64,000 bases of DNA. Source: Octopus sinensis (taxonomy: Eukaryota). The notes under the pieces were generated by a model that saw nothing but the letters and a program-made list of their open reading frames with translations, did not search any database and was not told the DNA's origin. Both the position numbers and the translations under genes were made by a program. This document shows positions 13,233-13,643 of the stretch, in pieces (position 1 is the stretch's first letter; the number at the start of each line of letters is the position of its first letter). The DNA lies in contig NC_042999.1 in the NCBI RefSeq assembly GCF_006345805.1, positions 54,622,001-54,686,000 on the forward strand, read 5' to 3'.

Positions 13233-13271
<39 letters not shown>

Positions 13272-13321
13272 AATAAATGAAAGAATCTAAAAGTTTTTGT
13301 GCATCTTGATGCTGACATAAT

Positions 13322-13418
13322 TTCCTTTGTTTTCCTGATGAGAAGCGGCATAATGCACCCCTTATTCCTTCGAAATTAGGATATGCAGCCTTCGAAACAT
13401 ATGTCGAAAATAAAGGAA
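13322..13418 (+). ncRNA. Type-I hammerhead ribozyme, canonical core
   Basis: Stem I ttcctttgttttc/gaaaataaaggaa (13 bp, one G-U); CTGATGA 13335-13341; stem II closed by gaag/cttc; GAA 13394-13396; stem III ACATATGT; GUC site with C17 at 13405. Confidence 0.85.
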
Positions 13419-13643
13419 TTTTTTAATTCGTCATTCAACTCCATTCTTTCTTTATTTGTATTTAAAAAAAAAACACACAAATTTCCACACGATAGCACGT
13501 GATCTCTGGCCCTAGGCAATGTGCTTCAACCGTGTTTTTCTGACGTGAATTTGCTACCCAGGTATCGGTTAACCGAATTATCCATAATAAGATAATTCAT
13601 TCAACTACTCAATTATTTACATATATATATATATATATAATAG

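What the first reader, a model, noticed from the sequence alone, without database searches (positions are those of the whole stretch)
13269..13473. Intact canonical hammerhead ribozyme capping a ~190-nt inverted-repeat-bounded unit
Seen: every invariant core base is present (CUGAUGA 13335-41, GAAA 13394-97, GUC 13403-05). Stem I is 13 bp, stem II is extended (gaag..gcata/tatgc..cttc) and stem III is the palindrome ACAUAUGU. The stem continues outward through an inverted repeat (acaaataaatgaaagaat 13269-86 / attctttctttatttgt 13443-59), so the whole unit could fold as a rod topped by the ribozyme. It follows (TA)n and precedes an A-run. Established: type-I hammerheads with palindromic stem III mark Penelope-like elements and retrozymes, and can cleave as dimers. 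Inference: a small non-autonomous ribozyme-bearing retroelement, possibly an uncharacterised retrozyme-like family.
Basis: partly seen in the sequence, partly recalled or inferred. Interest (0 to 1): 0.85.

Follow-up and report, generated by a model that had tools for sequence, protein, structure and literature searches.

The report
Solo type-I hammerhead ribozyme motif
A complete self-cleaving "hammerhead" RNA motif of the kind carried by small animal retroelements sits as a single copy between two TA microsatellites; it looks real but ordinary, most likely a stranded copy of a known class of mobile element.

Summary
At 13322-13418(+) there is a full type-I hammerhead. It has a 13-bp helix I, CUGAUGA, an extended 52-nt helix II closed by G10.1-C11.1, GAAA, the 8-nt palindrome ACAUAUGU as helix III, and GUC with the cut after 13405.

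Rfam's Hammerhead_1 model aligns end to end (27.0 bits, E 4e-5) when only the motif is searched. That is below the gathering score of 34, because 48 nt replace a 10-nt helix II, and the match is lost to filters in larger searches. Descriptor scans find only this locus in the window and almost nothing in 100-300 simulated windows. Helix III is unstable in the monomer and is predicted to pair in trans as an 8-bp helix.

The retroelement reading is plausible but unproven:
- There is no second copy, tandem repeat or Penelope-like ORF in 64 kb.
- The inverted repeat and the flanking (TA)n are unremarkable in this microsatellite-dense DNA.
- An 8-bp candidate target duplication is not significant.
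- The source genome could not be reached, so copy number and covariation are untested.

Verdict: a genuine hammerhead-derived motif, probably a solo copy of a retrozyme or Penelope-pLTR-type element. It is a new member of a known kind and of low interest.

The parts
13208..13267 (.). (TA)n tract directly upstream of the unit
   Evidence: TRF, period 2, 31 copies; sequence
13269..13286 (+). Left arm of the inverted repeat, ACAAATAAATGAAAGAAT
   Evidence: Pairs with 13443-59 at 17 positions with a 1-nt bulge. Significance is ambiguous.
13322..13334 (+). Helix I, 5' strand (positions 2.13-2.1)
   Evidence: 13 contiguous pairs with 13406-18, probabilities 0.76-1.0. The proximal 6 bp align to the Rfam model.
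13335..13341 (+). Core box C3-A9, CUGAUGA
13342..13393 (+). Extended helix II (52 nt): G10.1-C11.1 closing pair, 4 bp, an interruption, then 5 bp, with a 29-nt distal loop that can form a small UCCU/AGGA hairpin
   Evidence: MFE folds; folded alone it gives -9.4 kcal/mol. In the Rfam alignment 48 nt replace 10 model positions. The 9-mer CCTTCGAAA occurs twice, at 13367 and 13389.
13394..13397 (+). Core G12 A13 A14 plus A15.1 (GAAA)
13397..13404 (+). Helix III palindrome ACAUAUGU. It forms 2 bp plus an AUAU tetraloop in cis, or 8 bp in trans between two copies.
   Evidence: Monomer pair probability 0.03-0.04. All 8 positions pair between molecules in the cofold. It aligns to the model's palindromic ACGcgCGU.
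13405..13406 (+). C17 and the predicted scissile bond, between 13405 and 13406
   Evidence: Position follows from hammerhead numbering applied to the alignment. Cleavage itself is not tested.
13406..13418 (+). Helix I, 3' strand (positions 1.1-1.13)
13443..13459 (+). Right arm of the inverted repeat, ATTCTTTCTTTATTTGT
13464..13473 (+). A10 run. It could be the 3' end of a retroposed unit. The 8-mer ACACAAAT at 13267-74 recurs at 13475-82.
   Evidence: My rough estimate is that such an 8-mer repeat arises by chance about 9% of the time, so it is not significant.
13474..13620 (+). Non-repetitive remainder up to the next (AT)n. Whether it belongs to the element is unknown.
   Evidence: No similarity to the unit or to the upstream unique DNA. 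No Rfam match of note.
13621..13765 (.). (AT)n tract downstream, followed by a SINE-like repeat at 13766-14075

Best explanation
This is a genuine type-I hammerhead ribozyme motif of the invertebrate style, with a 2-bp helix III capped by a palindromic tetraloop. It lies in an AT-rich, non-coding stretch of roughly 200-350 nt between two (TA)n tracts.

It is most likely a solo (monomeric) copy of a hammerhead-bearing non-autonomous retroelement. That class comprises the metazoan non-LTR retrozymes and the related pLTR or tail fragments of Penelope-like elements.

The mechanism below is inferred, not shown. On a + strand transcript, helices I (13 bp) and II form readily. Helix III is too weak in cis, so two copies pair their ACAUAUGU palindromes into a shared 8-bp helix III, forming a double hammerhead. 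Each core then cuts after C13405, leaving a 2',3'-cyclic phosphate and a 5'-OH. In a tandem array this would release unit-length RNA that a host ligase can circularise and a PLE-type reverse transcriptase can copy back into DNA.

Here there is only one copy. At most one cut per transcript is possible, and the locus is probably an immobile relic.
For: - Motif and stems are present at the stated coordinates.
- Rfam Hammerhead_1 aligns in full, including the 8-nt palindromic helix III, at 27 bits and E 4.1e-5.
- Chance controls: 1 weak hit in 300 simulated windows and 0 in 100.
- The predicted dimer is 7.4 kcal/mol better than two monomers, with all 8 helix III positions paired in trans.
- G+C is 30% for 13269-13473, within the low-GC range reported for metazoan retrozymes (PMC7229834).
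- Metazoan type-I hammerheads have a 1-2 bp helix III with a palindromic loop and work as dimers. Most copies in genomes are single motifs, thought to derive from truncated PLEs (PMC4209133).
- Retrozyme families have consensus lengths of 51-972 bp. Monomer copies are common and evenly dispersed, and the families are related to PLE pLTRs (bioRxiv 10.64898/2026.07.22.740005).
- PLE hammerheads lie near the 3' end, and several PLE clades insert into (TA)n (PMC8557442).
Against: - The Rfam score is below the gathering score (27 against 34), and there is no hit in standard searches.
- There is no second copy or tandem repeat in 64 kb, and no PLE ORF in the window.
- Helix I is an uninterrupted 13-bp helix, so it has no loop 1. 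The loop 1 to loop 2 contacts that make canonical type-I hammerheads fast are therefore not evident.
- The extra nucleotide between A9 and 10.1 that is typical of PLE min-hammerheads is absent.
- (TA)n tracts are very dense here, with 27 of the window's 48 lying in 7-14.2 kb, so the flanks do not diagnose a target preference.
- Neither the inverted repeat nor the candidate 8-bp duplication is distinctive.
- No related sequence from any other locus or genome could be obtained, so there is no covariation evidence.
Confidence: 0.6

Rival explanations
1. LINE-mobilised SINE-like retroposon carrying a hammerhead, comparable to the Schistosoma Sm-alpha style. In this reading a ~200-nt unit at 13275-13473 ends in A10 and is flanked by the 8-bp target duplication ACACAAAT.
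For: A10 lies at 13464-73. ACACAAAT occurs at 13267-74 and again at 13475-82. A LINE-type RT and about 14 SINE-like copies in the window show that poly(A)-type retroposition is active in this genome.
Against: An 8-mer shared by two ~40-nt AT-rich zones is expected by chance about 9% of the time (my estimate). An A10 run is commonplace in 30% GC DNA. The proposed duplication overlaps the outer end of the inverted repeat. No other copies are available to define the ends.
Confidence: 0.15
2. Host-exapted hammerhead acting in cis within a cellular transcript (intron or UTR), as with the amniote intronic HH9/HH10 or the CLEC2 hammerheads, rather than a transposon relic.
For: The core is fully intact despite being a lone copy in decaying repeat-rich DNA. 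Single conserved hammerheads in host transcripts are known from the literature; this point rests on my own knowledge.
Against: No gene model or convincing exon lies nearby. The surroundings are microsatellites, a SINE-like repeat and a mariner fragment. The weak cis helix III argues against efficient solo cleavage. No orthologous locus is available to test conservation.
Confidence: 0.1
3. Chance hammerhead-like motif in low-complexity A/T-rich DNA, with no ribozyme ancestry.
For: The helix I strands are T-rich and A-rich low-complexity runs, which pair easily. The Rfam score is below gathering. A 27-bit hit would not be significant across a gigabase genome; this is my extrapolation of the E-value.
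Against: The simulations give essentially no hits even with 3-4 bp helices. The locus adds features the descriptors did not demand: a 13-bp helix I, G10.1-C11.1, C15.2-G16.2, and a palindromic helix III of exactly the family's 8-nt length.
Confidence: 0.07
4. Foldback or MITE-like DNA element bounded by 17-18 bp terminal inverted repeats, which happens to contain the ribozyme.
For: The inverted repeat 13269-86/13443-59 exists, and 13265-13465 folds as a rod (-40.7 kcal/mol, z = -2.66). The repeat beats flank shuffles at 6 of 2000.
Against: 39% of equally spaced segment pairs in this window pair as well. The interior is not symmetric, with 34 nt against 23 nt between the repeat arms and helix I. 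There is no clear TA or other duplication at the repeat ends, and no second copy.
Confidence: 0.05

Closest known systems
Hammerhead ribozyme type I (Rfam RF00163), metazoan or invertebrate form
   Same: It has the full conserved core, type-I topology with helix I open, G10.1-C11.1 and C15.2-G16.2. The 8-nt palindromic helix III region aligns to the model's ACGcgCGU. A 2-bp stem with a tetraloop is the form described for invertebrate hammerheads (PMC7229834).
   Different: Helix II is 52 nt instead of about 14 nt. Helix I is 13 uninterrupted bp instead of about 6 bp plus a loop, so the usual loop 1 to loop 2 contacts are not apparent. The score of 27 bits is below the gathering score of 34.
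Metazoan non-LTR retrozymes (Cervera & de la Pena 2020, PMC7229834; Li et al. 2026 bioRxiv)
   Same: It carries a type-I hammerhead with a weak palindromic helix III and is low in GC (30%). It is a non-coding unit a few hundred nt long that can fold into a compact or rod-like shape. Monomeric dispersed copies are documented for these families.
   Different: The defining tandem arrangement is absent here. Copy number, circular RNA and relatedness to any described family could not be tested.
Hammerheads in pLTRs or 3' tails of Penelope-like elements (Cervera & de la Pena 2014, PMC4209133; Craig et al. 2021, PMC8557442)
   Same: The motif is a type-I hammerhead with a palindromic helix III and a larger-than-usual helix II. 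It occurs as a single dispersed motif, as most PLE-derived copies do, and lies next to (TA)n, a preferred target of Neptune, Naiad and Hydra PLEs.
   Different: There is no RT or GIY-YIG ORF in the window. The unpaired nucleotide between A9 and 10.1 is missing, and helix I is much longer than the 4-5 bp of min-hammerheads. The (TA)n association is not significant in this microsatellite-dense region.

Membership tests
Hammerhead ribozyme type I (RF00163) | Conserved core: C3 U4 G5 A6 N7 G8 A9, G12 A13 A14, A15.1-U16.1, H17 | tested here: met
   CUGAUGA 13335-41, GAAA 13394-97, U13404, C13405
Hammerhead ribozyme type I (RF00163) | Three helices around the core, with helix I open-ended | tested here: met
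   Helices I and II appear in the unconstrained MFE fold. Helix III forms as 2 bp in cis or 8 bp in trans.
Hammerhead ribozyme type I (RF00163) | Score at or above Rfam's gathering score (34 bits) | tested here: not met
   27.0 bits over the full-length model, E 4.1e-5 on 117 nt. No hit at gathering, nor in the 451-nt search. The shortfall comes from 48 nt in place of a 10-nt helix II.
Hammerhead ribozyme type I (RF00163) | Loop 1 to loop 2 tertiary contacts of canonical natural hammerheads | tested here: inconclusive
   Helix I has no internal loop, only a G.U at pair 6. Helix II has an internal loop after 4 bp that might substitute for loop 2. Mussel retrozyme hammerheads also lack the archetypal contacts (PMC7229834).
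Hammerhead ribozyme type I (RF00163) | Mg2+-dependent self-cleavage 3' of H17 | not testable with these tools
   Needs in vitro transcription of monomer and dimer constructs.
Metazoan non-LTR retrozyme | Head-to-tail tandem repeats of 150-450 bp, each with a type-I hammerhead | tested here: not met
   There is a single copy. No tandem array covers the unit and no second copy exists in the window. The upstream TTCCTGAAGA at 13155 is a chance match. Solo monomers of such families do exist.
Metazoan non-LTR retrozyme | Low G+C (<45-50%), non-coding, no LTR/PBS/PPT | tested here: met
   GC is 0.30 for 13269-13473 and 0.34 for 13268-13620. Only short ORFs of 47 aa or less lie inside the unit; one 91-aa ORF (13076-13351, minus strand) runs into it from the upstream microsatellite.
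Metazoan non-LTR retrozyme | Multi-copy family in the genome; expressed linear and circular RNAs | not testable with these tools
   The source genome is not in the reachable collections.
Penelope-like element (pLTR hammerhead) | Adjacent ORF with a telomerase-like RT and a GIY-YIG endonuclease | tested here: not met
   Six-frame ORF listing. Pfam finds only a mariner HTH_48 domain at 14722-14958 and a LINE-type RVT_1 domain at 58468-58782.
Penelope-like element (pLTR hammerhead) | Min-hammerhead architecture: an unpaired nucleotide between A9 and 10.1, helix II of 6-8 bp, helix I of 4-5 bp, and a palindromic 15.2-16.2 and loop 3 | tested here: inconclusive
   The palindrome and a long helix II are present. 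The extra nucleotide is absent, and helix I is 13 bp (criteria from PMC4209133).
Penelope-like element (pLTR hammerhead) | Insertion into (TA)n (Neptune, Naiad and Hydra clades) | tested here: inconclusive
   The unit is flanked by (TA)n on both sides. However, 27 of the window's 48 TA tracts lie in 7-14.2 kb, and a SINE-like repeat sits in the same tract.

The most novel reading that the evidence does not exclude
The locus represents an undescribed retrozyme-like family in this (possibly molluscan) genome. Its hammerhead would have a long, interrupted helix II and a 13-bp helix I embedded in a rod-like ~190-nt RNA. It would be active only as a trans or tandem dimer, and elsewhere in the genome it would be present in tandem arrays that yield circular RNAs missed by standard Rfam screening.
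Probability: 0.15. Interest if true: 0.45.

Novelty: new member of a known kind. Interest (0 to 1): 0.25.

Why it matters
If confirmed genome-wide, this would add one more host lineage or family to the already large catalogue of hammerhead-bearing retroelements in animals.

There is also a practical point. A complete type-I hammerhead with an enlarged helix II is invisible to a routine Rfam scan, both at gathering score and in the 451-nt E-value search. It was recovered only when the motif alone was searched. Censuses based on default cmscan settings may therefore undercount such variants.

Tried and rejected
- **Whole-window Rfam at gathering, and a 451-nt E-value search:** no hammerhead. A 117-nt search showed this was a filter loss rather than absence.
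- **Second copy in the window:** blastn with word size 7 found none, and TRF found no tandem array over the unit.
- **Possible degenerate upstream hammerhead at 13155 (TTCCTGAAGA, 177 nt upstream):** local alignment of 13010-13207 against the unit scores no better than shuffles, so I rejected it.
- **Core-like hit at 53751-53807(-):** it has no usable helices.
- **Relatives elsewhere:**
  - The 19-mer scan of viral contigs found nothing.
  - The same scan of metagenome contigs gave 4 hits. All lie in sequence that bears no resemblance to the unit outside the 19-mer, and I judged them to be chance matches in bacterial coding DNA.
  - Exact-protein look-ups of two window ORFs found nothing.
  - A protein search with a window TE ORF gave at best about 60% identity.
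  - A search with the translated SINE-like repeat gave one 543-bp contig.
I ran no further search on the translated unit.
- **Full-text search for the helix II and helix III sequence strings:** only unrelated papers.
- **tRNA scan of the window:** none.
- **Idea that the 22-nt internal repeat (CCTTCGAAA twice) marks decay of helix II:** removing it makes helix II weaker (-2.0 against -9.4 kcal/mol), so this is not supported.

Full report
**The observation**

The sequence at 13269-13473 is as described. On the + strand, the strand 13322-13334 (UUCCUUUGUUUUC) pairs with 13406-13418 (GAAAAUAAAGGAA) in 13 contiguous pairs. One of these is G.U, and the partition-function probabilities are 0.76-1.0.

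Between the two strands lie, in order:
- CUGAUGA at 13335-41.
- A 52-nt helix II region at 13342-93.
- GAAA at 13394-97.
- The palindrome ACAUAUGU at 13397-13404.
- C13405.

In hammerhead numbering every invariant base is present. The closing pairs are the canonical G10.1-C11.1 and A15.1-U16.1/C15.2-G16.2, and the cleavage triplet is GUC. Helix II is GAAG/CUUC, then a C-G pair with a bulged C and a G.A mismatch, then GCAUA/UAUGC. It is capped by 29 nt that can form a small hairpin. The unconstrained MFE fold reproduces helices I and II.

**Is it more than chance?**

I ran two descriptor scans.
- The strict scan required an exact core, helix II of at least 3 bp and helix III of at least 2 bp. 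It found only this locus in the window. In 300 first-order Markov simulations of the window, both strands, it found a single hit whose helix I was 3 bp.
It again found only this locus, and none in 100 simulations.

Rfam gave no match at gathering score for the whole window and none at E<=10 on 13150-13600. When only 13312-13428 was searched, RF00163 Hammerhead_1 aligned over its whole length (positions 1-45) to 13329-13411 at 27.0 bits and E 4.1e-5. In that alignment 48 nt stand in place of the model's 10-nt helix II interior, which accounts for the 7-bit shortfall from the gathering score of 34. The earlier misses are therefore filter losses.

The model's helix III consensus, ACGcgCGU, is itself an 8-nt palindrome, and ACAUAUGU matches it in length and symmetry. 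I conclude that the motif is hammerhead-derived with high probability (about 0.9).

**Likely behaviour of the RNA (inferred)**

In the monomer the two helix III pairs have probability 0.03-0.04. Two copies cofold at -55.6 kcal/mol against 2 x -24.1 kcal/mol, and all eight palindrome positions pair between the molecules.

This is the double-hammerhead arrangement described for metazoan type-I motifs. Those have a short helix III with a palindromic loop, poor cleavage as monomers and efficient cleavage as dimers (PMC4209133; PMC7229834).

Helix I has no internal loop, so the classical loop 1 to loop 2 contacts are not evident. The internal loop after the first 4 bp of helix II might play that role, but this is speculation. 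Activity is untested.

**The wider unit**

The inverted repeat 13269-86/13443-59 is real, with 17 matches and one bulge. The segment 13265-13465 folds as a rod at -40.7 kcal/mol, z = -2.66.

The flank-to-flank duplex of -17.6 kcal/mol beats dinucleotide shuffles of the same flanks (6 of 2000). However, 39% of equally spaced segment pairs drawn from this window pair as well. The rod is therefore not distinctive in this DNA.

The unit plus 147 nt of unique sequence (13268-13620, 353 nt, 34% GC) lies between (TA)n at 13208-67 and (AT)n at 13621-13765. That arrangement looks like an insertion into a TA microsatellite. Several PLE clades prefer (TA)n and carry their hammerhead near the 3' end (PMC8557442). 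Against this, 27 of the window's 48 TA tracts lie in 7-14.2 kb, and a SINE-like repeat sits in the same tract. The association is therefore suggestive only.

An 8-mer, ACACAAAT, flanks a 200-nt stretch that ends in A10. This could be a target duplication of a poly(A)-type retroposition, but I estimate about a 9% chance occurrence.

**Context and relatives**

The window is microsatellite-rich eukaryotic DNA. It contains:
- About 14 copies of a SINE-like repeat.
- A mariner HTH_48 fragment at 14722-14958 and a LINE-type RVT_1 fragment at 58468-58782(-).
- A TE-like ORF at 2776-3627 with 779 homologues across animals.

I suspect a mollusc, perhaps a cephalopod, from memory of such repeats. This is unverified.

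There is no PLE RT or GIY-YIG ORF in the window. There is no second copy of the unit, and the upstream TTCCTGAAGA is a chance match.

No related locus could be fetched:
- The viral scan was empty.
- The protein collections evidently lack this genome.

Copy number, tandem arrays and covariation are the decisive evidence, and they remain untested.

**Comparison with known families**

The motif works like a metazoan type-I hammerhead and meets that family's sequence and structure definition, except for the curated score cut-off.

It resembles retrozyme and PLE-pLTR hammerheads in its palindromic helix III, enlarged helix II, low GC and dispersed single copy. Such monomers are common and evenly dispersed in genomes, and retrozymes are phylogenetically tied to PLE pLTRs (bioRxiv 10.64898/2026.07.22.740005).

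It fails the tandem-repeat criterion of retrozymes and the adjacent-ORF criterion of PLEs at this locus. It also lacks the A9/10.1 bulge of PLE min-hammerheads. I therefore file it as a probable solo derivative of that class, not as a demonstrated member of either.

**Verdict**

The finding is a new member of a known kind. Thousands of such motifs are known in animal genomes, so interest is low (0.25).

The one practically useful point is that the enlarged helix II hides a complete hammerhead from a routine Rfam scan.

Noticed in passing
window 13312-13428 compared with 1-64000: Rfam's Hammerhead_1 match (27 bits, full-length) appears only when about 117 nt are searched. It is dropped by the filters in the 451-nt E-value search and in the whole-window gathering search.
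   Followed up: yes
13367-13375 and 13389-13397: The 9-mer CCTTCGAAA occurs twice, 22 nt apart, inside the hammerhead, and each copy is followed a few nt later by ATATG. This looks like a 22-nt internal duplication. Removing one period weakens helix II (-2.0 against -9.4 kcal/mol).
   Followed up: partly
13766-14075, and about 13 other sites (e.g. 5841-6077, 18516-18755, 27484-28251, 56281-56695, 62221-62399): A SINE-like repeat of about 180-310 nt is present in about 14 copies at 75-92% identity. Some copies form short tandem arrays with a 184-nt period. ARAGORN finds no tRNA in the window.
   Followed up: partly
19658-21509: A very long (ATGT)n array of 462 copies. The stretch 7-14.2 kb is almost entirely microsatellites of TA, ATAC, TATG and T-rich heptamers.
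   Followed up: no
14722-14958 (+): Mariner/Mos1-type transposase fragment (Pfam HTH_48, E 5e-8). Another mariner-like piece may lie at 44896-45213, but it had no Pfam hit.
   Followed up: partly
58468-60149 (-): A frame-broken non-LTR retrotransposon. It has an RVT_1 match at 58468-58782, and the upstream ORF pieces resemble an AP-endonuclease domain by eye.
   Followed up: partly
2731-4395 (+): A TE-like ORF series with no Pfam domain. It has 779 homologues at E<=1e-10 across animals (moth, termite, sponge, turtle, hagfish, horseshoe crab), with best identity only about 60%.
   Followed up: partly
53751-53807 (-): CTGATGA...GAAA...GTC occurs with the right spacing but without helices I or II. 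It is a chance core-like string.
   Followed up: yes
16590-16909: A 170-nt unit repeated 1.9 times at 96% identity within CA/TA-rich DNA.
   Followed up: no
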